From Aplysia californica (lineage: Eukaryota), in the NCBI RefSeq assembly GCF_000002075.1, contig NW_004797465.1, positions 684,438 through 748,437 of the forward strand: a stretch of 64,000 nt of DNA. The letters are read 5' to 3'. A model generated the notes under the pieces. It was not told the DNA's origin and searched no databases. It saw nothing but the letters and a program-made list of their open reading frames with translations. Position 1 is the stretch's first letter; each line of letters opens with the position of its first letter. A program made the translations under genes and the position numbers. Below, one piece after another: positions 322 to 63,734 of the stretch.

Positions 322-431
322 CCTTGAAGATCCTTTTGTTCTTGTATTTTTTGGACAGTTTGAATGGTTTATTCAATGTCAGAAGTTTTCCTCCAATCTT
401 TGCACATTTCTTTGAAGCACCAATAAAGTTC
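322..431 (-). CDS. C-type lectin domain exon 2: (E)NFIGASKKCAKIGGKLLTLNKPFKLSKKYKNKRIFK
   Basis: Acceptor TTTTTCTTTTTGTTCCACAG|G, donor AAGG|GTGAGT; 110 bp, phase 2-1; F..A...C...GG.L motif of CTLD helix 1. Confidence 0.8.
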
Positions 432-1400
432 CTGTGGAACAAAAAGAAAATTAGTAAGATGGTCAACAGCTGGCACAATCAATGTCTCTCAGCTTTCGTC
501 TTGGTGTCATGTTGATGCGATGCTGAATTTTGCGCAAACGACGGCTTATATTGCCACCAAAGTGAGAACAGTTCGAGGCCATACGTCCGTTTATCACGTG
601 CACCAGAAATTTAACTGAGGAATTTATATGGTGTCGCACACAGGTCGAAAAAAACCCAGGAAATCTTGCTAAAATTCCCCGAGGATTTCCGTGCTGCACG
701 TGGCGGTTTTGCCACTTTAGGAAGCTTTTCTGTGCGCACTGGTTACCCATTAACACTTTCAGAGCATAACATTTTGAAACATTCCTTGTGGTCTTTTTTC
801 GGATATTTTTAAAGATAGGGCTGTCCTTCAAGGTGGTCCTTAACTTATGATGAAGTCTATAGTTAAGTGTGTAAAGCGAATAGAGCTTTCTGTAGAGTGG
901 GTATATGCGCTTTACAAATNNNNNNNNNNNNNNNNNNNNNNNNNNNNNNNNNNNNNNNNNNNNNNNNNNNNNNNNNNNNNNNNNNNNNNNNNNNNNNNNN
1001 NNNNNNNNNNNNNNNNNNNNNNNNNNNNNNNNNNNNNNNNNNNNNNNNNNNNNNNNNNNNNNNNNNNNNNNNNNNNNNNGCCTCTTCTTCTTCTTATTTT
1101 TCTTCTTCTTCTTCTTCCTCTTCTTCTTCTTCTTCTTCCTTTGCCCTAATGAATTACACATGTGCTATTCTTACTCTTTTCCTCCTCTCTCGATGAAGAG
1201 ACAGCGACCACCGTGGGCTTTGAAGGGTTTGCTGCACTTGGCAGAGTCATCTGTCGAGAGCAATGGACGTAGGGTTGATGTAAAAATAAGACACGGTAAC
1301 AATAATCTACCACACTGGTAGCATGGGAAGTGATGGACATTGCACACATATGATAAACAATCATACTATCAATTAGTCTGTCTGCCTTATCCCCTCACCC

Positions 1401-1457
<57 letters not shown>

Positions 1458-4400
1458 CTTGCTCACAAACACGAAAGCACACAGACCTGTATACTCAATC
1501 AAAATCGTAAGATCATTATGAGTAATTATCAAGATATTCAAAGAATTGCATATTAAGTAAAAGCTTGAAATATTGTAAAACTCAAAATCTTCTGCGTCAA
1601 ACGTCTCAAAACTACGTACTCTGAGCAGATCAAACGTTGTAATTCTGAGGTAGCGTTCTTGGATTGGTTGGAAAAAGGTTGTGTTTTGAATAATAAACTG
1701 GATCTCTCCTAGTTTGAATAATTGAAAGATGCAAATTTTGGGAAGTGGGGCAAAAGTCAGGATTCCTTTGTGGCTTGTCTTACCTGGCTCATTGGGAGAA
1801 GAACCGGGTTTTCCTGAAGAAAAAAAGAAACACACGTGGATTGCTTTCGAAAAAGTACAGATGTAAAAGTCCACTTCAAAATGCTGTCATGATCATCATT
1901 ATCATCATCATTGTCAACATCATTATCGTTATAATCTTCAACAACATCACAGTCATTATCATCGCAGTTGTCATATTCGTTGTCACCATCATCATCAGAA
2001 TAAAGATAGACTCGGGTTCATCAAAAGATAAAAGGGNNNNNNNNNNNNNNNNNNNNNNNNNNNNNNNNNNNNNNNNNNNNNNNNNNNNNNNNNNNNNNNN
2101 NNNNNNNNNNNNNNNNNNNNNNNNNNNNNNNNNNNNNNNNNNNNNNNNNNNNNNNNNNNNNNNNNNNNNNNNNNNNNNNNNTCCATTTACAGATCTGTTA
2201 ATTTATCTCTCGGTCTCTCCATATTTCCACCTATTCATATATTAACCAGTTTCTCTCTTTAAATTTTAATGCGTTGTTAGCTTTCTAATTATCTGCCCTT
2301 CTACACTGACAACAGACAGACAGGCAAGANNNNNNNNNNNNNNNNNNNNNNNNNNNNNNNNNNNNNNNNNNNNNNNNNNNNNNNNNNNNNNNNNNNNNNN
2401 NNNNNNNNNNNNNNNNNNNNNNNNNNNNNNNNNNNNNNNNNNNNNNNNNNNNNNNNNNNNNNNNNATCTGGCCATAAAAATTTGTTATACATATACATTA
2501 TACAAACTATTATGTTTCACATAGACACGTGCCCATTAATTTTTAAATTGTGATATCTTTAGGAACGAAATGCGCATTGAGCATTTTTTAAAATAGAAAA
2601 TAGAANNNNNNNNNNNNNNNNNNNNNNNNNNNNNNNNNNNNNNNNNNNNNNNNNNNNNNNNNNNNNNNNNNNNNNNNNNNNNNNNNNNNNNNNNNNNNNN
2701 NNNNNNNNNNNNNNNNNNNNNNNNNNNNNNNNNNNNNNNNNNNNNNNNNNNNNNNNAAAACTCAGAGACAGATGCAACAAAATGTGACCCATACACAGGG
2801 TAGAGCTTTACCTTTGTCATAGCAGACTTCGAATTCTCCTTTGCAACCACCAGATACCCAGACCATCGGCCCATCAAAACCGTACGTGGCATCAAACTGG
2901 CAGCGACGTCTTGCAGCACGGTCCTTGGGTTTCTTACTCTCCACGAGTTCCATCTTGGTGACACGGATAGCTCTATCGATGATTCTTGAGTTGAACTTGG
3001 AACCTTTGCTTTTCAGTTTCTTTTTCTTACACACATTATCAGTCTCTGAAGAAATAAAAATGAGAAAAATGGAGACGTAACATGTGAAACAATAAACCAT
3101 GTCAAACAGCTCTCCTCGCGATAAAATCGCTCACTTGTTCAATGTCAGTGAAGGAACAGTGTCGGGAAGATACTGTCAGCAGATGGTGACCCGCACGCAC
3201 GGAAGTAACGGGCTGGAAACGCGTGCGAGCAACAGCAACAGATGCGCTCAAGAAAAGACACTTGTTCAAAACTGACACAGGTGGTGAGAGAGCCGAGATG
3301 CTCACTCATAGTATGACAAATATACCGGGCTGATTTGTACACGGTGGACAATTTCAGCTGTATTGCAGTAGATCAATTGGTTTGCTTAACAATTAGTCGT
3401 GAGGGGGTGGGGCATGGGCGTGGGGATGGCGTTTTTAAAACAGAACATGAGTACCAAATTATTGTGGAAATGGGTAGCGAGAGAGATATTGGTGGGCACG
3501 CCATGTATTGCCATTGTTTTGCATTCAGACTATAAAGGAAACGTAACCAACCTTGGGCGATTTTTGTCAGGGTTGCATTTTGCAGCCACCAATTCTTTGG
3601 CCAGGCATTTGCTTTATTTTTGCATTTTGATGTAGTTTACATTATAATAATATTTAGGTTTGGAGGTTAAGATTTATAACTTTACCACCAAAATGCATAT
3701 TGATCTTCACGGCCAAAAATTATTGGTAGCATGGAGTCGTTTGAAACCAAATGCATTGCAGGATGTTGGTTTATTTCTAATTTCTAACGGTTTTTTTTCT
3801 TTTTTGGTTAGTTTCATCCTGCAGAGAAGCACAACTATTCTGGAGACATAAGAGCACCCATACCTATAAAAACCAGACCATTAGTTTTAATACGTGTTAC
3901 AAACGCTTCAACACATACCAAAGCGGTTTTTCAGTAAACTGCATTAATTTCCAGCGCTTAACAGAAACTGAAGAAAAGAAAGCAGTTATCATCATTCGTA
4001 TTTTACTCAACCTAATACAGTAAAAGAGTTGGCACAGAAAATTTTTTTTAGATCGGAAGGAAGAGTTACCATTGAAAGAATTAAAAGAAAAAAAAATTAG
4101 TCCAATTGTTTTTTCGTCTCGGTGTTTTTAGATTTACCCCTTTATTGGCAGATCCAACGGAATGACATTTCAAACGAACAGATAAAGGGTGTCCTTAACA
4201 GATAACAGGTTTTGGGATTTAGAGGGTTATTTTAAACTTTGGATATAAGCTCAAATGGTTTAGATCTGGATTGCATTCACCATAATGCGGAATAAACAGC
4301 CACTGAATATTTGGCGTAAAATTCTCGACAGGGTAGGGATCATAATCAATCTATAAAAACTGTCTCTGACATTTTTGTTTTTAAAAAGAAATTTAGTGAA

Positions 4401-7400
4401 AACAAACCTTTTTCTTTTGGCTTGTAGCAAACTTTGAATACTGCAAAGCAGTTGTTCTTCACCCAGGCCTTCTTTCCTTTAAAGCCAAAGGATTTATTCT
4501 TCTTGCACTTGCCCTTAGACTTTTCCTTCACCACCTTCATAGACTGGATTTTCTTGGCCTTTGAAAGTGTTTTCTGGTCTTTCTTTTTGTTTTTGCTTCG
4601 AAGTTGTAAATTTTGGCACTTATCTTCATCCTCATCTGAGAAAAAAGCGTATGTAAAAATGAATAGTGCTGGATACATCAACACATAACGTATATTCCTT
4701 TTAAAAGACTGGCCAACAGCTTTGATACTTATTACGACATTAAAATGTTAAACAAAACTTGCTCTTTTATGGTCAGGATTTAAACCACGTTTCTTGCCCT
4801 CAGCAGACCTAAAGACAAGAAAAGATTATCATCACACGTCATTTACACCCCCTTAGTGTTGTTCGAAACAACATTCATTGAACGATGTTGGTTTATTCAT
4901 TTTTTTCCTTCAATTTTTGGGTGGTTTTTATTCTGCAAAGAACTGCAAATTATGTTCTGAAGAGCGCATTTTGAAAAATACCTGAGAAGTGTTGGCATCG
5001 ACGAAAAAAAATGCTCCAAAAAATCATAACGCAATGTCAGGAATTACAAACGACAAAAATCATAGCCATTTTAACCAATAACTAAGGAGGCAAAAATTAA
5101 ACCTTTATCGCCAACAGTAACGTGAAAGAAAATTATAGGTAGAGAAAATGAGTCTAGACTTATTCGAAGAACAGAAGGAGGTAGTACTTAAGAACGACGA
5201 TATGTGTTACGACACAGTGGAATGAGGAACTCATCACATTTTGGATAAATGGTAAAATTAAGTACAATAAAGCTGATATTACAATATTATTGTTCTCAGG
5301 TTGGTATTTGAAATCCAGGGAGCAAAAGGGAAATAAATCAGGAATTTGTCTTTTTTATTTGAAACTTTGGATATGCATTCATATGGTTTAGTTATGGATT
5401 GATTCCAACACGATGCGGGGAAGAAAGCAAGTCACTGAATAACTCACAACATTCAATTAAACTAAAATAGTTAGAAGGATCGTTACAAGGGCTACATTTC
5501 TTTCTACACAGACTTAAGTTAAAACAAACCTTCATTGGGTTTTGGCTTGTAGCAAACTTTGAATACTGCACGGCAGTTGTTCTTCACCCAGACCTTCCTT
5601 CCTTTATAGCCAAAGGATTTATTCTTCTTGCATTTGCCCTTTGACAGTTCTTTCTTCATCTTCATTGACATGATTTTCTTGGCCTTTGAAAGAGTTTTCT
5701 GGTTTTTCTTTTTGTTTTTGCTTTCAAGTTGCAACGTTTTGCAATTATCTTCATTATCTTCTGAGAAAAAAAAAGTATAACAAATTATTAGTCCTCGATA
5801 CATCAGTACATAACGTACACATCCATTAAAAATCTGGCCAATAGATTTTCTATGTGCAACGACAGTTTGAAGTAAAACAAAGTGTTTCTTTTTCGGTCAA
5901 AGTGTAAATCACATTTCTAGCCCTTTAAAATACTAAAGATAAGATAGGAGTTATCATATATTATTCAACCTTATACTTGAGAAGAGTTGACATTGAAAAC
6001 AAAAATGTTTCTAAAAGATAGAAATAAACATCACCAATTATATGAGACAAAAATAATTTTTTAACCTTTTTTAAAACGGAGGTATTTATACGCCGCCATC
6101 AAAACAGTTTAGAAAGCTGGCTTTTAACCTAGCTGAGGGGTATACAATATCCCAGGAGTACGACCTGACTAAGAATTTTCTTCCCCTTTTAGTAATCAAA
6201 CTCAGGTCGCCAGCGTACAGCGGCAAAGCGCCTAAATGACATTCCACAGACACGGGTCAAAAATCATTGCCACAGTAATTACTAACTCGACAAAACCCGA
6301 ACCTTTCATGGCAACATTTTATACTTTTAAATGTTGGTGATCGACACGATATTTTGTTTAGATTATTTGGGAGGCGGGCTTCAATCCTGCCTACCAAGGC
6401 CAACTGGGATGGAGAGGGATACAACAGAAAGCAGAAAGACCGAATATACTCGATAAAAAATTCGCCCCAGTCGGGAATCAAAGTCATGACTCCTGCGTGC
6501 GACAGCGGTACGCCTTATCGCTACATCACGGCCCGGACACCAATATGATATAAGGCATTAACCATAGAGAGGCCTAGAAAGAAAGCAATTGTAAGGTGTG
6601 TTTAAATAACGGTTGGGGCGGGGTGAGTGCCCTTTAGAATTACACAGAATATCATTATATTATATTTTTGTACATTTTTTTTCTAAACAGAAAATAATAG
6701 GAGTATTAAATGCAGGAAGCAAAAGAAAACAGGTTTAGGGATTAGAATACGCACTAAAAATGTTTAGATTTGGGTTACAGCCGTCACAACACGGAGACAT
6801 AGGCAAATCATTGAATAACTGGGACACAATGTTATGACCGTGCAAACGAGATGAACAAACTGTAAGGATTGTCTCTGATAGGTGAGCCTTATTTTGTTTT
6901 TTGCTAAGACTCAAGTAAAAACAAACCTTTATCGCCTTTTGGCTTGTAGCAAACTTTGAATACTGCTCTGCAGTTGTTCTTCACCCAGGCCTTCCTTCCT
7001 TTATAGCCAAAGGATTTATTCTTCTTGCACTTGCCCTTTGACAATTCTTTCTTCATCTTCATAGACTTAATTTTCTTGGCCTCTGAAAGAGTTTTCTGGT
7101 CTTTCTTTTTGTTTTTGCTTTGGAGTTGTAAAGTTTTGCATTTTCCTTTACTCTCATCTGAGAAAGAAAACAGACAAAATAAATGTACCGGAGACATAAG
7201 CACATTACGCACACACCTAAGTAAAGGCTGGCCAATACTTTTGATCCGTTCTACAAGAGTTAAGATGAAACAAAGTATGTTTTTTTACTGTCAAACGCAA
7301 ACCACATTTTCGGCCCTCTAAAGACAGGAAGACAAAAATGGATTTGCCACCATGCATATTTTACTTAATCAAGTACTTGAGAAGAGTTGGCATCGTTGTA

Positions 7401-10400
7401 TTTGCACGAGTTTTACGCCGCTCGCAACTGCATAATGGCATTATATGAGCGCGCGAAACACAAGTTGGTTGCATTGACAACAGTTCACTGCAGGGCTGGG
7501 CTCGGGTCAATAATCAAATTTTAAAATGTTAGAATATAAAAATTTGGTGTAAATATATTTCAAACTTTAAACAACTTTTTAAAATAACATAAACATTTTA
7601 AACAATTTTATTTCATTTTACAATTTCCCATAACGGCCTTAATAAAATCCAGAACTCTGCTGGGATCAACGACGGAAAACAGACTTTCCAATTTTTTGCA
7701 TTTAAAATATTTCCTTCGGGTCTCTCCGAAGTCTAGACATTCGGTTAAAATGTGTCTAATGGTAAACTCTGTGCATCCGACACATAACGGCTTCTCATCT
7801 CTCTGAGGGAGGTATTTATGAGTTAGGGCCGTGTGTCCGATGCGTAATCGAGTAAAAATGACTTCGTCTCTTCTGGAGAGGCCCGAAGGATCTTGCGGTC
7901 CCAGCTTGGGCTTCATGTTGTAAAGTTTATTGTTTGTTCGTTTTTTCCAATGGGAATTGGCATCGAGGAAAACATGTTTCCAAAATGGGAAAGCAATGTC
8001 ATTGTTGCAAACAGTAGCAATTATGGCCTTTGTAACAAATCAGTAACTCGGCAAAGAGGAAACCCTTAATGTCAACTACTGGACAACTATCAAAGAGAGG
8101 CACATAAAGAAAACTATTATATAACGTATAAAAAGACCAGATGGAATCTGTCCGTAAAGAAGACAATATAATTTAAATTTTCTCTATTTTTCGAATCCAA
8201 AAAATAAGTATGTGAAAAGCAGAGAGTAAAAGGGAACAGGTTCAGGGACTTTTATTTTACTATAAACTTCGGCTTTGTACTCAAATGGTTTAGATCTGGA
8301 TTGCAACCCCCACAATTCATAGAAGAAAGTAAGTCAAATGAAAAGTGGCGCAAAATTTATGACAGTGCAGACGAGATGAACAAGCTATAATTAATATTGT
8401 CTAGGGTAGGTGAGCTGCATGTCTATTCACAAAGAATCATGTGAGAACAAACCTTCATCGGCGTTTGGCCCGAAACAAACTTTGAATACTGCATGACAGT
8501 TGTTCTTCACCCAGGCCTTCCTTCCTTTATAGCCAAAGGATTCACCTTTCTTGCATTTGCCTTTAGACAATTTTTCGATCATCTTCATAGACTTGATTTT
8601 CTTGGTCTTTGAAAGAGTTTTCTTGTCTTTCTTTTTGTTTTTGCTTTTGAGTGTTACAGTTTTGCAATTATCTTCATCCTCACCTGAGAAAACAACACAG
8701 GTAAATGTACTGAAGACATCAGCCCATAACATTGATAACCTGCCCAATACTTTTGATATAGACACGTGTTACAAGAGTTAGAGTAAAGCTTTTTTGTTGC
8801 CGCAAAGGTTTAAACCACATTTCAAGCGGTCTAAAAAAAGAAAAGTTTCGATATAAAAAAGCTATCATGTTGCGTATTTTACTCAATTTTTTACTTTAAA
8901 AGGCGCTGGAAGGATTGACTCGGATGTGTCTATTAAAAACGCAAGAGTATGTTTTTTTTTTCATGATCAAGACAAAATCATTGAATCTAAATATATTATT
9001 TTGCACTGTAGACGCAAGTGGTTTTAACTTCATTTAAATATTTTAAATTGAATTCTTATGAAGATTTACAGTCGAAAAAAAAATATTTTGAAAAACAAAA
9101 TCTGAAGGCAGTGGCACCAACCACCGAAATGTACCACTACTATTTCCAAAGGAGACAATGCCTCAATAGTCAAACGTTAAAACAATAGTAATTTAAGGAG
9201 AGGCGATAGTAAAGAGAGTTTAAGATTGATAAAGAGTGTACAAAGAGAGTATTGAAAGAAAAGCTGAAAGTTGCCCTTATTGAAGAAAGATTATTTATTT
9301 AAGGATTTATTTCCGACCTAAAAATCTACGTAAAATACGGTGAGCCATAAAAAAAACAAGGAAGAAAGTAATTTAATAAAATAAAATAGTTCTGGTGCAA
9401 AATTCAGGAGATAGCACAAAAGACTTAGATGCTGGAAGGAATGATTCTGATAGATTATTTTGCATAATAGATCTAGAAAAAGGTGGTTTTAACATCATTT
9501 GCATTTTGTAAACCGAATCCTTTTGAAGATTTACAATCGAAAAAAAAATATTTCTGAAACAAAATCTGAAGGCAGTAGCACCAATTACCGAAAGTACCCC
9601 TACTATTTCCAAAGAAGACAAAGGCTCAATGGTCAAACGCAAAAACAACCGTGTTTTAAGGAGAGGCGATAGTAAATAGAGTTTCCGAATCCATAGGAAG
9701 ATTTACATTCGAAAAATATATATTTCCAAAACAAAATCTGAAGGCAGTGGCACCTACCACTGAGAAGTACCGCTACTATTTCCAAAACAGACAATGCCTC
9801 ACTGGTCAAACGTAAAGACAATCGTGGTTTTAGGAGAGATGATAGTAAAGAGAGTTTAAGATTGATAAAGAGTGTACAATGTATTGAAAGAAAAGCTGGA
9901 AGTTGGCCTTACTAAAGACAGATTATTTATTTAAGGATTTTTTTTCCGACCTAAAAATCTACGTAAAATGCGGTGAGGCGTGAAAAAATAAGGAAGAAAG
10001 TACTTCATAAAAATAGAGTTCTTCTGGTGCAAAATTCACGAGATAGCATAAAAGATTTAGAAGTTGGAAGAAATGATTCTAATAGATTAGTAGCTGCATC
10101 GTTTTCCAAGAATTTAAAAACAACAACACCCCAACAAACCTTTATCGCCTTTTGGCTTGTAGCAAACTTTGAATACTGCACGGCAGTTATTCTTCACCCA
10201 GGCCTTCTTTCCTTTAAAGCCAAAGGATTTGTTCTTCTTGCACTTGCCCTTTGACTTTTCTTCTTTCATCTTCATAGACTTGATTTTCTTGGCCTTTGAA
10301 AGAGTCTTCTGATCTTTCTTTTTGTTTTTGCTTTCAAGTGTTATAGATTTGCATTTCTCTTTACCGCCCTCGTTGTCATCGTCGTCGTCTGAAGAAATAT

Positions 10401-32976: not shown

Positions 32977-33012
<36 letters not shown>

Positions 33013-54000: not shown

Positions 54001-57000
54001 AACGAGGTAGGAGGACACCTATTGAAAACCTCACAAAAATGTCAAGAGAAGGTAGACGACATAAGCAAACCAGAAGTAATAACTTTGATAAGTTGAATGC
54101 GAGATTGTTTTCCAGTACTCAGGTGAAAACAAACCTTCATCGCCTTTTGGCTTGTAGCAAACTTTGAATACTGCACGGCAGTTGTTCTTCACCCAGGCCT
54201 TTCTTCCTTTATAGCCAAAGGATTTATTCTTCTTGCACTTGCCCTCAGACAGTTCTTTCGTTATCTTCATTGACTTGATTTTCTTGGCCTTGGAAAGAGA
54301 TTTCTGGTCTTTTTCTTTGTTTTTGCTTTCAAGTTTTAAAGTTCTGCAGTTGCCTTTATCGCCTTCATCGCCTTCTTCCTCATCATCGTCTGAGAGAAAA
54401 GGTGAAAATAATATACTGCAGACGTCAGCGCCTAACTTACATACCCATTCTACGACAATTTGCTAACACATGCGTAGAAACACCCGCTAATAGAATGTTT
54501 TTAAAAACCTGGGATTCCATGACACTAGTTACAGACGGGAAAAGTATTGTTGCAGCAAACAAGTATTAACTGTTATGCTAAAAATAAACACCAACCAAGC
54601 AGATAAATGGCAAAAGGAAAGAAATTCCAAAAGTTAGGCAAAGATTGGTAACGATAGTATGGCGCTAAGAAAGACAATATTGAAGGGTATCCACAAGAAA
54701 GATCTCATGTTTTTGTACTTTGTTTTTCTTCAAATTTTCCACCTTTATCCTTAAAATAATGTGAAAAGTGGTGAGCAAAACGGAACGGAATCAGTCAGTG
54801 GGAGTAATTCTTGAAACTTTGGTTTCGATTTGGATTGCAGCCGCAACACACAAGGTAGAAAGCAACCCATTGAATGGCTGATAGAAAAGTCACGAAAAGA
54901 CGCACGAAATACACAGACCGGAAGTAGTGGTTTTGATAAGTATGATCTAAAATGGTTTTCAAGAGCTCAAGGAAACACAAACCTTCGTCGCCTTTGCCGC
55001 CTTTTGGCTTGTAGCAAACTTTGAAAACTGCACGGCAGTTGTTCTTCACCCAGGCCTTCCTTCCTTTGTAGCCAAAGGATTTATTCTTTTTGCACTTGCC
55101 GTTTGACAGCTCTTTCGTTATCTTCATTGACTTGATTTTCTTGGCCTTTGAAAGAGATTTCTCGTCTTTCTTTTTCTGTTTGCTTTCTAGTTTTAACTTT
55201 CTGCAGTTGCCTTTACCGCCTTCTTCTTCCTCATCATCGTCTGAAGAAAAAGATTAAAAGAATACACTGCAGACATAAGCACCTAACTTACAAACCAAAT
55301 TCACGGAATTTTCGCAAACCAATACATGTGAAATTAGGAATGTGTCCAAATAATTGGAAGAGAAGGAAACCAGTTACAAAACGTAAAACTATTGTTTGAA
55401 TAAACAATTTCTGACTTTCCCAGAAGAAAAACCAAGAACAACAAAAATGACCACGAATGTAAATACGACAGAAGTTCCAAATGTTAGGCCAAGAGTGATA
55501 CCGATTGAATGACGTTAGGAAAAATCAGATAATGGGTGCCTTCAGAAAGGCAGAATGTTTTTCGAACTTTTCCATTTTTATCCCTTAAAGTATGTGGAAT
55601 GAAGGGAGGAAAAAAGTAGCAGAATCAGTCAGTGGGAGAAGTTCTTGAAACTCCGGAGTGGCACATAAATGAATCAGATTTGGAATGCAAGCGCAACAAA
55701 CGAGGTAGGAGGACACCTTTTGAAATCCTCACAAAAATGTCAAAAGAAGGTAGACGGCATAAGCAAACCAGAAGTAATAACTTTGATAAGTTGAATGCGA
55801 GATTGTTTTCCAGTACTCAGGTGAAAACAAACCTTCATCGCCTTTTGGCTTGTAGCAAACTTTGAATACTGCACGGCAGTTGTTCTTCACCCAGGCCTTT
55901 CTTCCTTTATAGCCAAAGGATTTATTCTTCTTGCACTTGCCCTCAGACAGTTCTTTCGTTATCTTCATTGACTTGATTTTCTTGGCCTTGGAAAGAGATT
56001 TCTGGTCTTTTTCTTTGTTTTTGCTTTCAAGTTTTAAAGTTCTGCAGTTGCCTTTATCGCCTTCATCGCCTTCTTCCTCATCATCGTCTGAGAGAAAAGG
56101 TGAAAATAATATACTGCAGACGTCAGCGCCTAACTTACATACCCATTCTACGACAATTTGCTAATACATGCGTAGAAACACCCGCTAATAGAATGTTTTT
56201 AAAAACCTGGGATTCCATGACACTAGTTACAGACGGGAAAAGTATTGTTGCAACAAACAAGTATTAACTGTTATGCTAAAAATAAACACCAACCAAGCAG
56301 ATAAATGGCAAAAGGAAAGAAATTCCAAAAGTTAGGCAAAGATTGGTAACGATAGTATGGCACTATGAAAGACAATATTGAAGGGTATCCACAAGAAAGA
56401 TCTCATGTTTTTGTACTTTGTTTTTCTTCAAATTTTCCACCTTTATCCTTAAAATAATGTGAAACGTGGTGAGCAAAACGGAACGGAATCAGTCAGTGGG
56501 AGTAATTCTTGAAACTTTGGTTTCGATTTGGATTGCAGCCGCAACACACAAGGTAGAAAGCAACCCATTGAATGGCTGATAGAAAAGTCATGAAAAGACG
56601 CACGAAATACACAGACCGGAAGTAGTGGTTTTGATAAGTATGATCTAAAATGGTTTTCAAGAGCTCAAGGAAACACAAACCTTCGTCGCCTTTGCCGCCT
56701 TTTGGCTTGTAGCAAACTTTGAAAACTGCACGGCAGTTGTTCTTCACCCAGGCCTTCCTTCCTTTGTAGCCAAAGGATTTATTCTTTTTGCACTTGCCGT
56801 TTGACAGCTCTTTCGTTATCTTCATTGACTTGATTTTCTTGGCCTTTGAAAGAGATTTCTCGTCTTTCTTTTTCTGTTTGCTTTCTAGTTTTAACTTTCT
56901 GCAGTTGCCTTTACCGCCTTCTTCTTCTTCCTCATCATCGTCTGAAGAAAAAGATTAAAAGAATACACTGCAGACATAAGCACCTAACTTACAAACCAAA

Positions 57001-60000
57001 TTCACGGAATTTTCGCAAACGAATACATGTGAAAATAGGAATGTGTCCAAATAATTGGAAGAGAAGGAAACCAGTTACAAAACATAAAACTATTGTTTGA
57101 ATAAACAATTTCTGACTTTCCCAGAAGAAAAACCAAGAACAACAAAAATGACCACGAATGTAAATACGACAGAAGTTCCAAATCTTAGGCCAAGAGTGAT
57201 ACCGATTGAATGACGTTAGGAAAAATCAGATAATGGGTGCCTTCAGAAAGGCAGAATGTTTTTCGAACTTTTCCATTTTTATCCCTTAAAGTATGTGGAA
57301 TGAAGGGAGGAAAAAAGTAGCAGAATCAGTCAGTGGGAGAAGTTCTTGAAACTCCGGAGTGGCACATAAATGAATCAGATTTGGAATGCAAGCGCAACAA
57401 ACGAGGTAGGAGGACACCTATTGAAAACCTCACAAAAATGTCAAGAGAAGGTAGACGACATAAGCAAACCAGAAGTAATAACTTTGATAAGTTGAATGCG
57501 AGATTGTTTTCCAGTACTCAGGTGAAAACAAACCTTCATCGCCTTTTGGCTTGTAGCAAACTTTGAATACTGCACGGCAGTCGTTCTTCACCCAGGCCTT
57601 CCTTCCTTTATAGCCAAAAGATTTATTCTTTTTGCACTTGCCCTCTGACAGTTCTTTCGTTATCTTCATTGACTTGATTTTCTTGGCCTTTGAAAGAGAT
57701 TTCTGGTCTTTCTCTTTGTTTTTGCTTTCAAGTTTTAAAGTTCTGCAGTTGCCTTTATCGCCTTCATCGCCCTCTTCCTCATCATCGTCTGAGAGAAAAG
57801 GTGAAAATAATATACTGCAGAGGTATGCGCCTAAATTACATACCCATTCTACGGCAATTTGCTAATACATGCGTAGAAGTACCTGCTAATAGAATGTTTC
57901 CAAAATCCTGGGATTCCATGCCACAAGTTACAGACGGGAAAAGTATTGTTGCAGCACACAATTATTAACTGTTATGTTTAAAAAACACCGACCCAGCCAA
58001 TAAATGGAAAAAGGAAAGAAATTCCAAAAGGTAGACAAAGATTGGTAACAATAGTACAGCACTAGGACAGAACATATTGAAGGGTATCCACAAGAAAGAT
58101 ATCATGTTTTTGTACTTTGTTTTTCTTCAAATTTTCCACCTTTATCCTTAAAATAATGTGAAAAGTGGTGAGCAAAACGGAACGGAATCAGTCAGTGGGA
58201 GTAATTCTTGAAACTTTGGTTTCGATTTGGATTGCAGCCGCAACACACAAGGTAGAAAGCAACCCATTGAATGGCTGATAGAAAAGTCACGAAAAGACGC
58301 ACGAAATACACAGACCGGAAGTAGTGGTTTTGATAAGTATGATCTAAAATGGTTTTCAAGAGCTCAAGGAAACACAAACCTTCGTCGCCTTTGCCGCCTT
58401 TTGGCTTGTAGCAAACTTTGAAAACTGCACGGCAGTTGTTCTTCACCCAGGCCTTCCTTCCTTTGTAGCCAAAGGATTTATTCTTTTTGCACTTGCCGTT
58501 TGACAGCTCTTTCGTTATCTTCATTGACTTGATTTTCTTGGCCTTTGAAAGGGATTTCTCGTCTTTCTTTTTCTGTTTGCTTTCTAGTTTTAACTTTCTG
58601 CAGTTGCCTTTACCGCCTTCTTCTTCTTCCTCATCATCGTCTGAAGAAAAAGATTAAAAGAATACACTGCAGACATAAGCACCTAACTTACAAACCAAAT
58701 TCACGGAATTTTCGCAAACGAATACATGTGAAAATAGGAATGTGTCCAAATAATTGGAAGAGAAGGAAACCAGTTACAAAACGTAAAACTATTGTTTGAA
58801 TAAACAATTTCTGACTTTCCCAGAAGAAAAACCAAGAACAACAAAAATGACCACGAATGTAAATACGACAGAAGTTCCAAATCTTAGGCCAAGAGTGATA
58901 CCGATTGAATGACGTTAGGAAAAATCAGATAATGGGTGCCTTCAGAAAGGCAGAATGTTTTTCGAACTTTTCCATTTTTATCCCTTAAAGTATGTGGAAT
59001 GAAGGGAGGAAAAAAGTAGCAGAATCAGTCAGTGGGAGAAGTTCTTGAAACTCCGGAGTGACACATAAATGAATCAGATTTGGAATGCAAGCGCAACAAA
59101 CGAGGTAGGAGGACACCTATTGAAAACCTCACAAAAATGTCAAGAGAAGGTAGACGACATAAGCAAACCAGAAGTAATAACTTTGATAAGTTGAATGCGA
59201 GATTGTTTTCCAGTACTCAGGTGAAAACAAACCTTCATCGCCTTTTGGCTTGTAGCAAACTTTGAATACTGCACGGCAGTCGTTCTTCACCCAGGCCTTC
59301 CTTCCTTTATAGCCAAAAGATTTATTCTTTTTGCACTTGCCCTCTGACAGTTCTTTCGTTATCTTCATTGACTTGATTTTCTTGGCCTTTGAAAGAGATT
59401 TCTCGTCTTTCTTTTTCTGTTTGCTTTCTAGTTTTAACTTTCTGCAGTTGCCTTTACCGCCTTCTTCTTCTTCCTCATCATCGTCTGAAGAAAAAGATTA
59501 AAAGAATACACTGCAGACATAAGCACCTAACTTACAAACCAAATTCACGGAATTTTCGCAAACGAATACATGTGAAAATAGGAATGTGTCCAAATAATTG
59601 GAAGAGAAGGAAACCAGTTACAAAACGTAAAACTATTGTTTGAATAAACAATTTCTGACTTTCCCAGAAGAAAAACCAAGAACAACAAAAATGACCACGA
59701 ATGTAAATACGACAGAAGTTCCAAATCTTAGGCCAAGAGTGATACCGATTGAATGACGTTAGGAAAAATCAGATAATGGGTGCCTTCAGAAAGGCAGAAT
59801 GTTTTTCGAACTTTTCCATTTTTATCCCTTAAAGTATGTGGAATGAAGGGAGGAAAAAAGTAGCAGAATCAGTCAGTGGGAGAAGTTCTTGAAACTCCGG
59901 AGTGACACATAAATGAATCAGATTTGGAATGCAAGCGCAACAAACGAGGTAGGAGGACACCTATTGAAAACCTCACAAAAATGTCAAGAGAAGGTAGACG

Positions 60001-63000
60001 ACATAAGCAAACCAGAAGTAATAACTTTGATAAGTTGAATGCGAGATTGTTTTCCAGTACTCAGGTGAAAACAAACCTTCATCGCCTTTTGGCTTGTAGC
60101 AAACTTTGAATACTGCACGGCAGTCGTTCTTCACCCAGGCCTTCCTTCCTTTATAGCCAAAAGATTTATTCTTTTTGCACTTGCCCTCTGACAGTTCTTT
60201 CGTTATCTTCATTGACTTGATTTTCTTGGCCTTTGAAAGAGATTTCTGGTCTTTCTCTTTGTTTTTGCTTTCAAGTTTTAAAGTTCTGCAGTTGCCTTTA
60301 TCGCCTTCATCGCCCTCTTCCTCATCATCGTCTGAGAGAAAAGGTGAAAATAATATACTGCAGAGGTATGCGCCTAAATTACATACCCATTCTACGGCAA
60401 TTTGCTAACACATGCGTAGAAACACCCGCTAATAGAATGTTTTTAAAAACCTGGGATTCCATGACACTAGTTACAGACGGGAAAAGTATTATTGCAGCAA
60501 ACAAGTATTAACTGTTATGCTAAAAATAAACACCAACCAAGCAGATAAATGGCAAAAGGAAAGAAATTCCAAAAGTTAGGCAAAGATTGGTAACGATAGT
60601 ATGGCGCTAAGAAAGACAATATTGAAGGGTATCCACAAGAAAGATCTCATGTTTTTGTACTTTGTTTTTCTTCAAATTTTCCACCTTTATCCTTAAAATA
60701 ATGTGAAAAGTGGTGAGCAAAACGGAACGGAATCAGTCAGTGGGAGTAATTCTTGAAACTTTGGTTTCGATTTGGATTGCAGCCGCAACACACAAGGTAG
60801 AAAGCAACCCATTGAATGGCTGATAGAAAAGTCACGAAAAGACGCACGAAATACACAGACCGGAAGTAGTGGTTTTGATAAGTATGATCTAAAATGGTTT
60901 TCAAGAGCTCAAGGAAACACAAACCTTCGTCGCCTTTGCCGCCTTTTGGCTTGTAGCAAACTTTGAAAACTGCACGGCAGTTGTTCTTCACCCAGGCCTT
61001 CCTTCCTTTGTAGCCAAAGGATTTATCCTTTTTGCACTTGCCGTTTGACAGCTCTTTCGTTATCTTCATTGACTTGATTTTCTTGGCCTTTGAAAGAGAT
61101 TTCTCGTCTTTCTTTTTCTGTTTGCTTTCTAGTTTTAACTTTCTGCAGTTGCCTTTACCGCCTTCTTCTTCTTCCTCATCATCGTCTGAAGAAAAAGATT
61201 AAAAGAATACACTGCAGACATAAGCACCTAACTTACAAACCAAATTCACGGAATTTTCGCAAACGAATACATGTGAAAATAGGAATGTGTCCAAATAATT
61301 GGAAGAGAAGGAAACCAGTTACAAAACATAAAACTATTGTTTGAATAAACAATTTCTGACTTTCCCAGAAGAAAAACCAAGAACAACAAAAATGACCACG
61401 AATGTAAATACGACAGAAGTTCCAAATGTTAGGCCAAGAGTGATACCGATTGAATGACGTTAGGAACAATCAGATAATGGGTGCCTTCAGAAAGGCAGAA
61501 TGTTTTTCGAACTTTTCCATTTTTATCCCTTAAAGTATGTGGAATGAAGGGAGGAAAAAAGTAGCAGAATCAGTCTTTGGGAGAAGTTCTTGAAACTCCG
61601 GAGTGGCACATAAATGAATCAGATTTGGAATGCAAGCGCAACAAACGAGGTAGGAGGACACCTATTGAAAACCTCACAAAAATGTCAAGAGAAGGTAGAC
61701 GACATAAGCAAACCAGAAGTAATAACTTTGATAAGTTGAATGCGAGATTGTTTTCCAGTACTCAGGTGAAAACAAACCTTCATCGCCTTTTGGCTTGTAG
61801 CAAACTTTGAATACTGCACGGCAGTCGTTCTTCACCCAGGCCTTTCTTCCTTTATAGGCAAAGGATTTATTCTTCTTGCACTTGCCCTCTGACAGTTCTT
61901 TCGTTATCTTCATTGACTTGATTTTCTTGGCCTTGGAAAGAGATTTCTGGTCTTTTTCTTTGTTTTTGCTTTCAAGTTTTAAAGTTCTGCAGTTGCCTTT
62001 CTCGCCATCATCGCCTTCTTCCTCATCATCGTCTGAGTGAAAAGGTAAAAATAATATACTGCAGACGTCAGCATCTAATTTAAATACCCATTTCTCCCTA
62101 TTTTGATCAAGCTCATTTTTTGTAAAGAATTACCTACAAGAAAGAATGTTTCCAAAATATCCTTCGGCAATAACATCAATTACTGACGGAACAATTTATG
62201 TCACAGTATTCAGTTACTGACTCAGTAAGAAAAAAGAAACCCCAAAAGGCTTTTTATGCCAATAGAATAGACATTCTAAAGGAAAGGCCAAGACTGATTC
62301 CGATTGTATGACGTTAGGAAAGAACGCAAGGGGTGTGTCCTTCAGAAAGACAGAATGTTTCTCCCAGCATTTCATTTGTATAGCTAAAAGCATGTGGAAT
62401 ATAAGGAGCAAAACGGAGCAGAAACAGTCGGCGGGAGTATTTATTACAATTTTAGACAGGCTCTCATATGACTAAAATTTGGATTGCAGTCGTAACAAGT
62501 AGGAACAAAGCAACGCATTTAAATACTGATGCAGAATTTACGAGAAGGCAGATCAGATACACAGACCAAGAAAAATGAATTTGATAATGCAGCAGCCACA
62601 TTGTTTTCCAGTACTCAGGTGAAAACAAACCTTCATCGCCTTTTGGCTTGTAGCAAACTTTGAATACTGCACGGCAGTCGTTCTTCACCCAGGCCTTCCT
62701 TCCTTTATAGCCAAAAGATTTATTCTTTTTGCACTTGCCCTCTGACAGTTCTTTCGTTATCTTCATTGACTTGATTTTCTTGGCCTTTGAAAGAGATTTC
62801 TGGTCTTTCTCTTTGTTTTTGCTTTCAAGTTTTAAAGTTCTGCAGTTGCCTTTATCGCCTTCATCGCCCTCTTCCTCATCATCGTCTGAGAGAAAAGGTG
62901 AAAATAATATACTGCAGAGGTATGCGCCTAAATTACATACCCATTCTACGGCAATTTGCTAATACATGCGTAGAAGTACCTGCTAATAGAATGTTTCCAA

Positions 63001-63734
63001 AATCCTGGGATTCCATGCCACAAGTTACAGACGGGAAAAGTATTGTTGCAGCACACAATTATTAACTGTTATGTTTAAAAAACACCGACCCAGCCAATAA
63101 ATGGAAAAAGGAAAGAAATTCCAAAAGGTAGACAAAGATTGGTAACAATAGTACAGCACTAGGACAGAACATATTGAAGGGTATCCACAAGAAAGATATC
63201 ATGTTTTTGTATTTTGTATTTCTTCAAATTTTCCACATTTATCCTTAAGATCATGTGAAATGTGCTGAGCAAAACGGAACGGAATCTGGCAGTGGGAGTA
63301 ATTCTTGAAACTTTGGTTTCGAATTGGATTGCAGCAGCAACGCACAAGGTAGAAAGAAACCCATTGAATTGCTGATAGAAAAGTCACGAAAAGACGCACA
63401 AAGTACACACACCGGAGGTAGTGGTTTTGATAAGTATGCTGTTAAATGGTTTTCAAGAGCTCAAGGAAACACAAACCTTCGTCGCCTTTGCCGCCTTTTG
63501 GCTTGTAGCAAACTTTGAAAACTGCACGGCAGTTGTTCTTCACCCAGGCCTTCCTTCCTTTGTAGCCAAAGGATTTATCCTTTTTGCACTTGCCGTTTGA
63601 CAGCTCTTTCGTTATCTTCATTGACTTGATTTTCTTGGCCTTTGAAAGAGATTTCTCGTCTTTCTTTTTCTGTTTGCTTTCTAGTTTTAACTTTCTGCAG
63701 TTGCCTTTATCGCCTTCTTCTTCCTCATCATCGT
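322..63734 (-). CDS. Giant multi-exon gene (partial at both ends): >=60 tandem Lys-rich ADEL/DUF3011-like lectin-fold repeats + linker + C-type lectin domain
   Basis: 63 exons with polypyrimidine-YAG acceptors and GT donors, all phase-compatible; 60 repeat exons sum to about 5,070 codons; no start exon or stop exon in window. Confidence 0.85.
1082..1140. repeat. (CTT)n microsatellite
   Basis: Visible imperfect trinucleotide run next to a gap. Confidence 0.9.
1175..1250 (-). CDS. C-type lectin domain exon 1: DDSAKCSKPFKAHGGRCLFIERGGK(E)
   Basis: Acceptor CTCTCGACAG|AT, donor GA|GTAAGA; 76 bp, phase 1-2; matches long-form CTLD N-terminus C...W/F...GG.C(Y/L). Confidence 0.8.
1404..1454. repeat. 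(CT)n microsatellite
   Basis: Perfect dinucleotide run. Confidence 0.95.
1784..1813 (-). CDS. 30-bp linker micro-exon (G)KPGSSPNEP
   Basis: Acceptor TTTCTTTTTTTCTTCAG|GA, donor CCAG|GTAAGA; phase 1-1. Confidence 0.7.
1887..1997. repeat. Degenerate (ATC)n low-complexity repeat
   Basis: catcat/atcatc runs. Confidence 0.8.
2812..3045 (-). CDS. Last, most divergent ADEL/DUF3011-like repeat exon (ETDNVCKKKKLKS...CQFDATYGFDGPMVWVSGGCKGEFEVCYDK)
   Basis: CAG acceptor, G|GTAAAG donor, 234 bp, phase 1-1, 4 Cys. Confidence 0.88.
4408..4635 (-). CDS. Lys-rich ADEL-like repeat exon (diverged singleton)
   Basis: CAG / G|GTTTGT, 228 bp, phase 1-1. Confidence 0.88.
5530..5760 (-). CDS. Lys-rich ADEL-like repeat exon (diverged singleton)
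   Basis: CAG / G|GTTTGT, 231 bp. Confidence 0.88.
6075..6538 (-). mobile_element. Probable tRNA-derived SINE-like insertion with two tRNA-like modules
   Basis: Absent from paralogous introns; degenerate A/B boxes (GTGATGTAGCGAT...TTTGATTCCCGAC at 6455-6538; GACCTGAGTTTGATTAC at 6171-6257); ends approximate. Confidence 0.45.
6927..7157 (-). CDS. Lys-rich ADEL-like repeat exon (diverged singleton)
   Basis: CAG / G|GTTTGT, 231 bp. Confidence 0.88.
7396..7956 (-). mobile_element. 5'-truncated non-LTR retrotransposon 3' end (I/Nimb-like, C-terminal zinc knuckle)
   Basis: ORF 7608-7916 with RLRIGH...C..C....TIRHIL..C; 9-bp TSD ttggcatcg at 7387-7395 and 7957-7965. Confidence 0.85.
8453..8683 (-). 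CDS. Lys-rich ADEL-like repeat exon (diverged singleton)
   Basis: CAG / G|GTTTGT, 231 bp. Confidence 0.88.
10140..10388 (-). CDS. Array-1 repeat exon
   Basis: CAG / G|GTTTGT, 249 bp. Confidence 0.85.
11233..11484 (-). CDS. Array-1 repeat exon
   Basis: CAG / G|GTTTGT, 252 bp. Confidence 0.85.
12157..12411 (-). CDS. Array-1 repeat exon
   Basis: 255 bp, D8 linker. Confidence 0.85.
13256..13510 (-). CDS. Array-1 repeat exon
   Basis: 255 bp, D8 linker. Confidence 0.85.
14355..14606 (-). CDS. Array-1 repeat exon
   Basis: 252 bp. Confidence 0.85.
15451..15702 (-). CDS. Array-1 repeat exon
   Basis: 252 bp. Confidence 0.85.
16547..16798 (-). CDS. Array-1 repeat exon
   Basis: 252 bp. Confidence 0.85.
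17643..17894 (-). CDS. Array-1 repeat exon
   Basis: 252 bp. Confidence 0.85.
18567..18818 (-). CDS. Array-1 repeat exon
   Basis: 252 bp. Confidence 0.85.
19663..19914 (-). CDS. Array-1 repeat exon
   Basis: 252 bp. Confidence 0.85.
20759..21010 (-). CDS. Array-1 repeat exon
   Basis: 252 bp. Confidence 0.85.
21683..21934 (-). CDS. Array-1 repeat exon
   Basis: 252 bp. Confidence 0.85.
22779..23030 (-). CDS. Array-1 repeat exon
   Basis: 252 bp. Confidence 0.85.
23703..23954 (-). CDS. Array-1 repeat exon
   Basis: 252 bp. Confidence 0.85.
24627..24875 (-). CDS. Array-1 repeat exon
   Basis: 249 bp, D6 linker. Confidence 0.85.
25720..25971 (-). CDS. Array-1 repeat exon
   Basis: 252 bp. Confidence 0.85.
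26816..27064 (-). CDS. Array-1 repeat exon
   Basis: 249 bp, D6 linker. Confidence 0.8.
27912..28163 (-). CDS. Array-1 repeat exon
   Basis: 252 bp. Confidence 0.8.
29043..29105 (-). mobile_element. 63-bp retroelement 3'-tail insertion with (TACA)n tail
   Basis: TSD atggtttttt at 29033-29042 and 29106-29115; core ttttacggcgctcgcaactgc...atatgagcgcgc resembles the 3' end of the LINE at 7411-7455. Confidence 0.65.
29156..29599. mobile_element. About 445-bp intronic insertion, possible degenerate MITE
   Basis: Interrupts the gaatctaaa|tagattatt intron motif; weak inverted ends (aggcgcgcatcaa vs ttgacgagcgcct). Confidence 0.4.
29918..30022 (-). pseudogene. Truncated, frameshifted repeat pseudo-exon (AKEEEESGKEKCKSVTLESKYRKKNH...)
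   Basis: Keeps CAG acceptor and 5' half; 8-nt deletion relative to sister exons; 3' half and donor are missing. Confidence 0.75.
30835..30857. repeat. (CAA)n microsatellite next to a splice donor
   Basis: Expanded relative to array-1 units. Confidence 0.85.
30878..31123 (-). CDS. Repeat exon, array-1-like, at the junction
   Basis: CAG / G|GTTTGT, 246 bp, open. Confidence 0.8.
31150..32970 (+). mobile_element. Decayed, 5'-truncated RTE-like LINE (reverse transcriptase), antisense to host gene
   Basis: RT motifs KKGDLHECKNYRGI.LLS.PGK, QAGFRKKRSCTDQIATLRIIVEQS, RQGCLLS, LDCADELVLL, FTYL; stops and frameshifts; followed by (GA)n; 5' boundary approximate. Confidence 0.92.
32981..33012. repeat. 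(GA)n microsatellite at LINE 3' end
   Basis: Perfect run ending at a gap. Confidence 0.9.
33113..33155 (-). CDS. Partial repeat exon (DDDEEEGDEVEKDK...) running into an assembly gap
   Basis: CAG acceptor plus acidic linker codons; remainder is in Ns 33013-33112 or lost. Confidence 0.45.
33750..34010 (-). CDS. Array-2 type A repeat exon
   Basis: CAG / G|GTTTGT, 261 bp. Confidence 0.85.
34604..34858 (-). CDS. Array-2 type B repeat exon
   Basis: 255 bp. Confidence 0.85.
35425..35679 (-). CDS. Array-2 type B' repeat exon
   Basis: 255 bp, TAG acceptor. Confidence 0.83.
36272..36532 (-). CDS. Array-2 type A repeat exon
   Basis: 261 bp. Confidence 0.85.
37125..37379 (-). CDS. Array-2 type B repeat exon
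   Basis: 255 bp. Confidence 0.85.
37973..38233 (-). CDS. Array-2 type A repeat exon
   Basis: 261 bp. Confidence 0.85.
38826..39080 (-). CDS. Array-2 type B repeat exon
   Basis: 255 bp. Confidence 0.85.
39674..39934 (-). CDS. Array-2 type A repeat exon
   Basis: 261 bp. Confidence 0.85.
40527..40781 (-). CDS. Array-2 type B repeat exon
   Basis: 255 bp. Confidence 0.85.
41375..41635 (-). CDS. Array-2 type A repeat exon
   Basis: 261 bp. Confidence 0.85.
42228..42482 (-). CDS. Array-2 type B repeat exon
   Basis: 255 bp. Confidence 0.85.
43076..43336 (-). CDS. Array-2 type A repeat exon
   Basis: 261 bp. Confidence 0.85.
43929..44183 (-). CDS. Array-2 type B repeat exon
   Basis: 255 bp. Confidence 0.85.
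44777..45037 (-). CDS. Array-2 type A repeat exon
   Basis: 261 bp. Confidence 0.85.
45630..45884 (-). CDS. Array-2 type B repeat exon
   Basis: 255 bp. Confidence 0.85.
46478..46738 (-). CDS. Array-2 type A repeat exon
   Basis: 261 bp. Confidence 0.85.
47331..47585 (-). CDS. Array-2 type B repeat exon
   Basis: 255 bp. Confidence 0.85.
48179..48439 (-). CDS. Array-2 type A repeat exon
   Basis: 261 bp. Confidence 0.85.
49032..49286 (-). CDS. Array-2 type B repeat exon
   Basis: 255 bp. Confidence 0.85.
49880..50140 (-). CDS. Array-2 type A repeat exon
   Basis: 261 bp. Confidence 0.85.
50733..50987 (-). CDS. Array-2 type B repeat exon
   Basis: 255 bp. Confidence 0.85.
51581..51841 (-). CDS. 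Array-2 type A repeat exon
   Basis: 261 bp. Confidence 0.85.
52434..52688 (-). CDS. Array-2 type B repeat exon
   Basis: 255 bp. Confidence 0.85.
53282..53542 (-). CDS. Array-2 type A repeat exon
   Basis: 261 bp. Confidence 0.85.
54135..54389 (-). CDS. Array-2 type B repeat exon
   Basis: 255 bp. Confidence 0.85.
54983..55240 (-). CDS. Array-2 type A repeat exon
   Basis: 258 bp (one Glu codon fewer). Confidence 0.85.
55833..56087 (-). CDS. Array-2 type B repeat exon
   Basis: 255 bp. Confidence 0.85.
56681..56941 (-). CDS. Array-2 type A repeat exon
   Basis: 261 bp. Confidence 0.85.
57534..57788 (-). CDS. Array-2 type B repeat exon
   Basis: 255 bp. Confidence 0.85.
58380..58640 (-). CDS. 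Array-2 type A repeat exon
   Basis: 261 bp. Confidence 0.85.
59233..59484 (-). CDS. Chimeric A/B repeat exon
   Basis: 252 bp; N-terminal half type A, C-terminal half type B. Confidence 0.8.
60077..60331 (-). CDS. Array-2 type B repeat exon
   Basis: 255 bp. Confidence 0.85.
60925..61185 (-). CDS. Array-2 type A repeat exon
   Basis: 261 bp. Confidence 0.85.
61778..62032 (-). CDS. Array-2 type B repeat exon (SFAY variant)
   Basis: 255 bp. Confidence 0.85.
62631..62885 (-). CDS. Array-2 type B' repeat exon
   Basis: 255 bp. Confidence 0.85.
63477..63734 (-). CDS. Array-2 type A repeat exon
   Basis: 258 bp. Confidence 0.85.

What the first reader, a model, noticed from the sequence alone, without database searches (positions are those of the whole stretch)
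322..63734. A >5,000-aa protein built from >=60 one-exon, Lys-rich ADEL/DUF3011-like lectin domains ending in a C-type lectin domain
Seen: 60 intact phase 1-1 exons, each one 76-87 aa 4-Cys domain, joining into one uninterrupted frame of about 5,070 codons; no signal-peptide exon or stop between units, and the array runs off the right edge. Established, from recall: the motif C..L.S...S...C....SFGY.....WV..(G/N)CRA.FKVCY matches the repeat of Aplysia egg/gonad galactose-binding lectins (ADEL) and DUF3011, which normally occur in only a few copies per chain. Inference: a giant beads-on-a-string secreted matrix protein (mucus, adhesive, egg jelly or capsule). I do not know of a described protein with this architecture.
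Basis: partly seen in the sequence, partly recalled or inferred. Interest (0 to 1): 0.92.

Follow-up and report, generated by a model that had tools for sequence, protein, structure and literature searches.

The report
Giant lysine-rich sea-hare lectin-repeat protein
A sea hare (Aplysia californica) gene strings more than 100 positively charged copies of an egg-lectin domain, one per exon, in front of a mucus/adhesive-type scaffold, probably making a huge secreted gel cross-linker that current annotation splits into small fragments.

Summary
The window holds 60 intact minus-strand phase 1-1 DUF3011 exons (5,069 codons). The whole array on this Aplysia californica scaffold has 112 intact exons plus 16 broken copies, behind one signal-peptide exon 71 kb upstream. 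Spliced RNA contigs from two studies join the last repeat, a missed 30-nt micro-exon and two C-type-lectin-like exons across all four left-hand gaps. The gene most likely continues through WxxW, three VWD/TIL units, more CTLs and EGFs; a paralogue has the same order with about 6 repeats. Repeats are 29% Lys and lack the aromatic motif of the egg lectins. Best reading: a secreted polycationic cross-linker for mucus or egg matrix, working like flatworm Mlig-ap1. Unproven: how many repeats one mRNA carries. At least two exons are skipped, and repeat depth is only 2-3 times tail depth. Capsulin-like proteins already have 17-26 repeats; none found has this tail. The scan noted only the CTL splice before, on this same window.

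The parts
33750..63734 (-). A-type block: 35 intact DUF3011 exons, mostly as a 1.7-kb two-exon unit; continues upstream of the window (52 more intact exons to contig 806,874; signal-peptide exon at contig 819,234-819,180 with a TATA box)
   Evidence: junction between two A-type repeats seen in an RNA contig of X4 (table 7, read against the exon ends)
33113..33155 (-). start of a further repeat exon, cut by the gap 33013-33112
31300..32980 (+). fragmented LINE (reverse transcriptase) between the A and B blocks
   Evidence: RVT_1 E 3e-8
30878..31123 (-). intact DUF3011 exon (B-like)
29910..30040 (-). broken (frameshifted/truncated) repeat pseudo-exon; limits approximate
28927..28990 (-). acceptor region of another B-type exon, cut by the gap 28827-28926
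10140..28163 (-). B-type block: 18 intact DUF3011 exons in 0.92/1.10-kb units, about 99% identical
   Evidence: expressed: X4/X5 contigs carry exactly the B-type differences
4408..8683 (-). four diverged but intact DUF3011 exons (8453-8683, 6927-7157, 5530-5760, 4408-4635); the last two are skipped in the X5 contig
2812..3045 (-). last, divergent DUF3011 exon of the array
   Evidence: RNA contigs X4, X5
1784..1813 (-).
   Evidence: joints
1175..1250 (-). first exon of a C-type-lectin-like domain
   Evidence: spliced; CTL identity from Cys pattern only
322..431 (-). second CTL-like exon. The gene continues left of the window, past a 1,859-N gap, most likely into WxxW, VWD, TIL, EGF, CTL and DUF3011-like exons down to about contig 635,700
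   Evidence: contig runs 4,121 nt further

Best explanation
One gene of about 184 kb in Aplysia californica encodes a secreted protein: signal peptide, a tandem array of up to 112 DUF3011 (egg-lectin-type) beta domains, then a tail of CTL, WxxW, three VWD/TIL units, further CTLs, one more DUF3011-like domain and EGFs. The array grew by unequal crossing-over of symmetric phase 1-1 exon units from an ancestor with about 6 repeats. Each bead is a disulfide-bonded beta sandwich with net +16 to +22 charge, joined by short acidic linkers (-6 to -7). Likely mechanism (inferred): the VWD/TIL tail polymerises or anchors the protein, as in mucins and invertebrate glues, while the polycationic beads cross-link anionic (uronic-acid or sulfated) polysaccharides and glycoproteins, mostly electrostatically and with high avidity. 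That would set the cohesion of a secreted gel (egg string, egg jelly or pedal/adhesive mucus). Because all exons share one phase, skipping or copy-number change keeps the frame, so length is probably variable. Shown: exon structure, domain identity, splicing at the 3' end and of one repeat-repeat junction, strong run-specific expression. Inferred: the signal exon join, continuity across the 1,859-N gap, the repeat count per mRNA, the tissue and the ligand.
For: Exons and frame. One signal exon with TATA box upstream and none inside. DUF3011 by Pfam, AlphaFold pLDDT 90 all-beta, Atlas TM 0.76 to DUF3011. Tail domains by Pfam; GDPH motifs in VWD1 and VWD2 and a CGLCG motif in VWD1. Spliced RNA at word depth 1,742 (X4) and 933 (X5), almost none in X14. 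Paralogue on C80 with the same order: at least 6 DUF3011 exons, WxxW, TIL, DUF3011-like. 28.6% Lys, net about +13 per repeat. AKL binds galacturonic acid (PMC5484111). Lys/Arg-rich plus CTL-vWD-C8-TIL-EGF is the layout of the flatworm cohesive protein Mlig-ap1, which heparin blocks (PMC6410801); similar domains occur in limpet pedal-mucus proteins (PMC7333891).
Against: Repeat-to-tail contig depth is 2.6-3.1 for B (18 expected) and 1.8-2.2 for the A junction (25-37 expected), and no single exponential 3' decay fits both. Two intact exons are skipped in X5. No tissue label, no proteomics, no binding data. CTL1 and the C8 exons gave no Pfam hit exon by exon. The array is the longest gap-free stretch in a gappy scaffold (71.7 kb against a median of 3.1 kb), which is unexpected for near-identical repeats.
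Confidence: 0.58

Rival explanations
1. Same gene and role, but real mRNAs carry only about 10-30 repeats, because most exons are skipped, alleles are shorter, or the assembly over-extended the array or merged two haplotypes. This concerns size only and can coexist with the best explanation.
For: Low repeat/tail depth ratios in X4 and X5; skipped exons; 16 pseudo-exons; weak GTTTG donors on 110 of 112 exons; suspiciously long gap-free array.
Against: 54 distinct exon sequences and 53-57 distinct 100-180 bp haplotypes at matching positions imply at least about 27 genomic copies per haplotype. Private variants occur, and neighbouring units share variants in the A dimer block (p=0.007; B block p=0.12). 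In X6 repeat contigs reach depth 110 with no tail depth. The tool warns that contig depth is a poor measure.
Confidence: 0.45
2. A defensive agglutinin: a highly multivalent cationic lectin that traps or kills bacteria in mucus or egg mass, rather than a structural cross-linker.
For: ADEL from A. dactylomela was described as antibacterial/antibiofilm (title cited in PMC8878817); the tail resembles FCGBP; cationic surfaces bind bacteria (general knowledge).
Against: The aromatic SWNYKY-type motif and the conserved Gln of ADEL repeats are replaced by Lys/Glu. Near-identical repeats give avidity but no ligand diversity.
Confidence: 0.17
3. A zonadhesin-like gamete-surface or sperm-packaging protein of the reproductive tract.
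For: Repeated VWD/TIL units plus EGF resemble zonadhesin (general knowledge; PMC7333891 notes the same homologies); AKL-family lectins come from gonad and eggs (PMC5484111).
Against: No transmembrane exon was seen at the presumed end (by eye); no MAM domain among the exons scanned; tissue unknown.
Confidence: 0.1
4. A cluster of separate small ADEL-like genes, as RefSeq annotates it (XP_035825812.1, XP_035825815.1).
For: RefSeq models of 301 and 199 aa on this scaffold; true ADEL genes are three-exon units elsewhere in the genome.
Against: Those models start at an internal Met, have no signal peptide, and end in intron or out-of-frame sequence. There is only one signal exon. RNA joins repeats to each other and to the tail.
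Confidence: 0.03

Closest known systems
AKL/ADEL egg lectins of Aplysia (DUF3011, PF11218; PMC5484111; XP_005099808.1)
   Same: Same 4-Cys domain, one domain per exon, signal peptide, 33-36% identity to the repeats.
   Different: Three repeats, about 240 aa, net charge -4, aromatic SWNYKY motif. Here up to 112 repeats, 29% Lys, motif lost, large tail.
Capsulin-like multi-DUF3011 proteins (Elysia marginata GFR94244.1 'capsulin', 17 repeats; Plakobranchus GFN97594.1, 26 repeats)
   Same: Long tandem strings of the same domain. Aplysia capsulin is an albumen-gland protein for mechanical egg protection (PMC4500399).
   Different: 7-12% Lys, divergent repeats, and no similarity to the CTL/WxxW/VWD tail.
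Flatworm cohesive protein Mlig-ap1 (5,407 aa; PMC6410801) and Tmed/Mile-ap1 plus ap3 (PMC9229212)
   Same: Giant secreted protein with thousands of Lys/Arg-rich residues plus CTL, vWD, C8, TIL and EGF domains; polyanion-sensitive cohesion.
   Different: Its cationic part is low-complexity GRK sequence; here it is built from folded lectin-type domains with acidic linkers, and there are three VWD units and WxxW domains. Orthology was not tested.
Limpet pedal-mucus proteins P-vulgata_1/2/4, sea-star Sfp1, FCGBP, zonadhesin, gel-forming mucins (PMC7333891)
   Same: Multiple VWD units with CTL, EGF and TIL domains in secreted gels.
   Different: No DUF3011 array reported. Here the array takes the place of a PTS domain, and no cystine knot was seen.

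Membership tests
DUF3011 / AKL-ADEL domain family | Pfam PF11218 above curated cut-off (25 bits) | tested here: met
   34.8, 30.5 and 29.9 bits for A, B and 8683 types; 24.6 and 22.1 for two edge exons
DUF3011 / AKL-ADEL domain family | Conserved Cys and the W-V-x-x-(G)-C-x-A-x-F core; same fold | tested here: met
   4 Cys in all 110 exons scored; alignment; model matches DUF3011 cluster at TM 0.76, rmsd 1.1
AKL/ADEL lectins proper | Three-repeat chain of about 220-240 aa with SWNYKY-type motif | tested here: not met
   up to 112 repeats; motif replaced by Lys-rich sequence
AKL/ADEL lectins proper | Galacturonic acid / galactose binding | not testable with these tools
   no solved relative and no known binding site
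Capsulin | Chain made only of about 17 DUF3011 repeats | tested here: not met
   different size, composition and tail; an Elysia capsulin repeat matches C80 weakly and not this locus. The original capsulin paper was not available.
Gel-forming mucins | VWD-C8-TIL assemblies | tested here: inconclusive
   VWD (two by Pfam, third by motif only) and TIL (three) found; C8 exons are Cys-rich but gave no Pfam hit
Gel-forming mucins | Long PTS (Pro/Thr/Ser) O-glycosylated domain | tested here: not met
   array is 2.2% Thr, 7.2% Ser, 1.2% Pro; only one short Pro-rich frame in the tail; gaps could hide more
Gel-forming mucins | C-terminal cystine knot | tested here: inconclusive
   none recognised in the last exon found; the true 3' end is not proven
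Mlig-ap1-type cohesive proteins | Very large Lys/Arg-rich region plus CTL-vWD-TIL-EGF core | tested here: met
   28.6% Lys over about 9,500 aa; tail domains
Mlig-ap1-type cohesive proteins | Expression in adhesive gland cells and loss of adhesion on knockdown | not testable with these tools
   runs carry no tissue label
Mlig-ap1-type cohesive proteins | Orthology of the core | not tested
   the Mlig-ap1 sequence was not fetched

The most novel reading that the evidence does not exclude
A single mRNA of about 35 kb includes most of the 112 repeat exons and encodes a secreted protein of about 12,000 aa (over 1.3 MDa; tail length is a rough estimate). In it a lectin fold has been turned into a polycationic bead and amplified about 20-fold, with frame-neutral exon skipping tuning gel stiffness. 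That would be a folded-domain counterpart of the low-complexity cationic glues of flatworms.
Probability: 0.3. Interest if true: 0.82.

Novelty: new variant of a known kind. Interest (0 to 1): 0.64.

Why it matters
It exposes a very large, highly expressed secreted protein in a classic model animal that RefSeq breaks into 200-300 aa 'lectin ADEL-like' fragments. It links the poorly understood DUF3011 lectin domain to the VWD/CTL/EGF family of marine glues and mucus proteins, and suggests a second route to a polycationic cohesive protein. It is also a clear case of exon-array expansion with concerted evolution and decaying pseudo-exons. A single 75-residue bead is easy to express, so the charge-versus-sugar question and a first structure of this domain (no solved relative was found) are directly testable.

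Tried and rejected
First motif regex was too strict. No solved structure by sequence or clear fold match: Foldseek none at E<=0.001, VIA best Z 4.6, with weak rows for H-type lectins and phage fibres, not taken as evidence. Single-sequence AlphaFold of two repeats was poor (pLDDT 60) and was not used. Length-limited homologue searches found only this locus and one 533-bp contig, which says nothing about long relatives. None of the 150 best DUF3011 hits matches the tail beyond the internal DUF3011-like exon. The Lys-rich hit P0142 lies among bacterial-type genes and is not an orthologue. Whole Elysia capsulin gave no match in the genome at E<=1e-8. The capsulin paper and PF26705 were not available. 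A simple exponential 3'-decay model was rejected as the sole cause of the RNA depth pattern. Literature searches found no description of this gene.
Full report
Origin. The window is G000:C195:684,438-748,437 of a 927.3-Mb, 4,332-scaffold genome. Two RefSeq proteins made of these repeats are named 'lectin ADEL-like [Aplysia californica]' and lie on a contig of 1,239,006 bases, the length of C195. The animal is therefore A. californica. From memory the size matches the short-read assembly AplCal3.0; PMC9334734 confirms only that this assembly is a Broad whole-genome shotgun.

Observation. The window holds 60 intact minus-strand exons of 228-261 nt, each with AG/GT ends, phase 1-1 and four Cys, together 5,069 codons. 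They fall into an A block (33,750-63,734), one exon at 30,878, a B block of 18 units about 99% identical (10,140-28,163), four diverged exons (4,408-8,683) and a divergent last exon (2,812-3,045). The window also has a broken pseudo-exon near 29,910-30,040, two exons cut by gaps (28,927; 33,113) and a LINE fragment at 31,300-32,980. Upstream lie 52 more intact exons and 15 broken copies, up to contig 806,874: 112 intact exons, 9,567 codons. A scan for ATG plus hydrophobic stretch plus phase-1 donor gave one convincing exon, at contig 819,234-819,180, with a TATA box about 145 nt upstream. It joins in frame to the first repeat on paper; none lies inside the array.

Gaps and splicing. I laid four runs on window 1-6000. 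Contigs of X4 and X5 (two studies; labelled RNA by guess, but they skip introns with canonical ends) join 2,812-3,045 to a 30-nt micro-exon at 1,784-1,813, then 1,175-1,250, then 322-431. This crosses all four left-hand gaps, and the frame is open. The X4 contig is 4,564 nt and runs 4,121 nt beyond position 321. Other contigs carry exactly the B-type differences, and one X4 contig ends across a junction between two A-type exons (table 7, read). So repeats are expressed and spliced to each other. In X5 the last repeat is joined to an exon end shared by B-type exons and exon 6,927-7,157, so exons 4,408-4,635 and 5,530-5,760 are skipped there. The raw poly(A) run X14 has almost no reads, so expression is restricted, but tissues are not given. 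The gaps at 28,827, 30,328 and 33,013 could not be tested. I did not fill any gap or reuse read letters, and the joined model was not sent to a search tool.

The tail. A 1,859-N gap abuts the left edge of the window. Beyond it, on the same strand, come exons for WxxW, VWD (with GDPH and CGLCG motifs), TIL, EGF, CTL-like pieces, a divergent DUF3011-like exon (hhalign 94.5%), a second WxxW, EGF, a second VWD (GDPH), TIL, CTL, Ca-EGF, a third VWD recognised by motif only, TIL and EGFs, ending near contig 635,700. Continuity across that gap is inferred from the length of the X4 contig and from a paralogue on C80 with the same order on one strand: at least six DUF3011 exons (217.7-205.3 kb), WxxW (199.6), TIL (190.5), DUF3011-like (186.6). 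The first CTL is supported by its Cys pattern only. I estimate the tail at roughly 2,500 aa; this is not a finished model.

The bead. Pfam DUF3011 passes its cut-off for the main types. AlphaFold with 110 sequences gives a confident all-beta domain (pLDDT 90) that matches DUF3011 models (TM 0.76) and has no clear solved relative. Repeats are 28.6% Lys, +16 to +22 per domain, with linkers of -6 to -7, and 97 of 110 carry an N-glycosylation sequon. Against ADEL (net -4), the SWNYKY-type aromatic motif and a conserved Gln are replaced by Lys and Glu. AKL binds galacturonic acid (PMC5484111), so a shift to charge-driven polyanion binding is plausible but untested.

Is the length real? The array is the longest gap-free stretch of a gappy region (71.7 kb, median 3.1 kb), which calls for caution. 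It holds 54 distinct exon sequences and 53-57 distinct read-length haplotypes at matching positions, so at least about 27 copies per haplotype exist even if alleles were merged. Neighbouring A dimers share variants more than chance (p=0.007; B block p=0.12). RNA contig depth of repeats over tail is 2.6-3.1 for B and 1.8-2.2 for the A junction, against 18 and 25-37 if every exon were used evenly, and no single exponential decay fits both. X6 points the other way (repeat depth 110, tail none). Contig depth is a weak measure, so the repeat number per mRNA stays open.

Comparison. A profile search of 1.84 billion representatives found at most 26 and 17 repeats (Plakobranchus; Elysia 'capsulin'), with 7-12% Lys and no match to this tail. 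The closest working analogue is flatworm Mlig-ap1: 5,407 aa, over 3,600 Lys/Arg-rich residues plus CTL, vWD, C8, TIL and EGF, a cohesive protein blocked by heparin (PMC6410801). Limpet pedal mucus has similar VWD/CTL/EGF proteins (PMC7333891). This gene contains DUF3011 domains but is not an ADEL lectin, not capsulin and not a classical mucin. It probably works like a cationic cohesive gel protein; membership in the ap1 group was not tested.

Verdict. Real and expressed; the architecture was not found in the searches or papers available, and RefSeq splits it into fragments. New variant of a known kind, interest 0.64. The function is inferred by analogy and the true chain length needs long reads.

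Noticed in passing
G000:C80:164-88,406 (+) and 186,501-217,728 (-); G000:C370:275,079: Paralogous modules (WxxW, TIL, DUF3011-like) repeated several times on C80, so there is a small family of such large secreted proteins; one has at least 6 DUF3011 exons and a 696-aa open frame.
   Followed up: partly
window 31,300-33,012: LINE reverse-transcriptase fragment on the + strand with a GA-repeat tail, next to a 100-N gap (33,013-33,112) that the scan did not list; a repeat exon is cut by that gap.
   Followed up: partly
G000:C195:778,000-802,000: Upstream part of the array alternates intact exons with 15 broken or partial copies, a record of exon birth and decay.
   Followed up: partly
run X6, record 15: A repeat-to-repeat junction whose downstream exon start is unlike the exon starts I saw in the assembly; may be allelic or lie in a gap. 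Left as is.
   Followed up: no
L029:218-454: A 533-bp metagenome contig (ERZ27289751) carries a 71%-identical Lys-rich exon with the same phase-1 AG/GT ends and acidic linker, probably host DNA of a related slug.
   Followed up: partly
G000 scaffolds C224, C285, C155, C351, C656, C217, C33, C432, C454, C32, C506 and others; C3:4,040,288-4,040,947: Roughly 15-20 three-exon ADEL-type genes, plus one intron-less copy with a stop on C3 that looks like a retrocopy.
   Followed up: no
window 470-870 and 1,520-1,650: Intron stretches matched by many diverged RNA contigs and reads in all runs: common repetitive elements, not part of the gene.
   Followed up: no
G000:C195:856,489-857,274 (+): Open frame with an HGGG and GDSAGG motif, typical of an alpha/beta hydrolase, upstream of the gene.
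   Followed up: no
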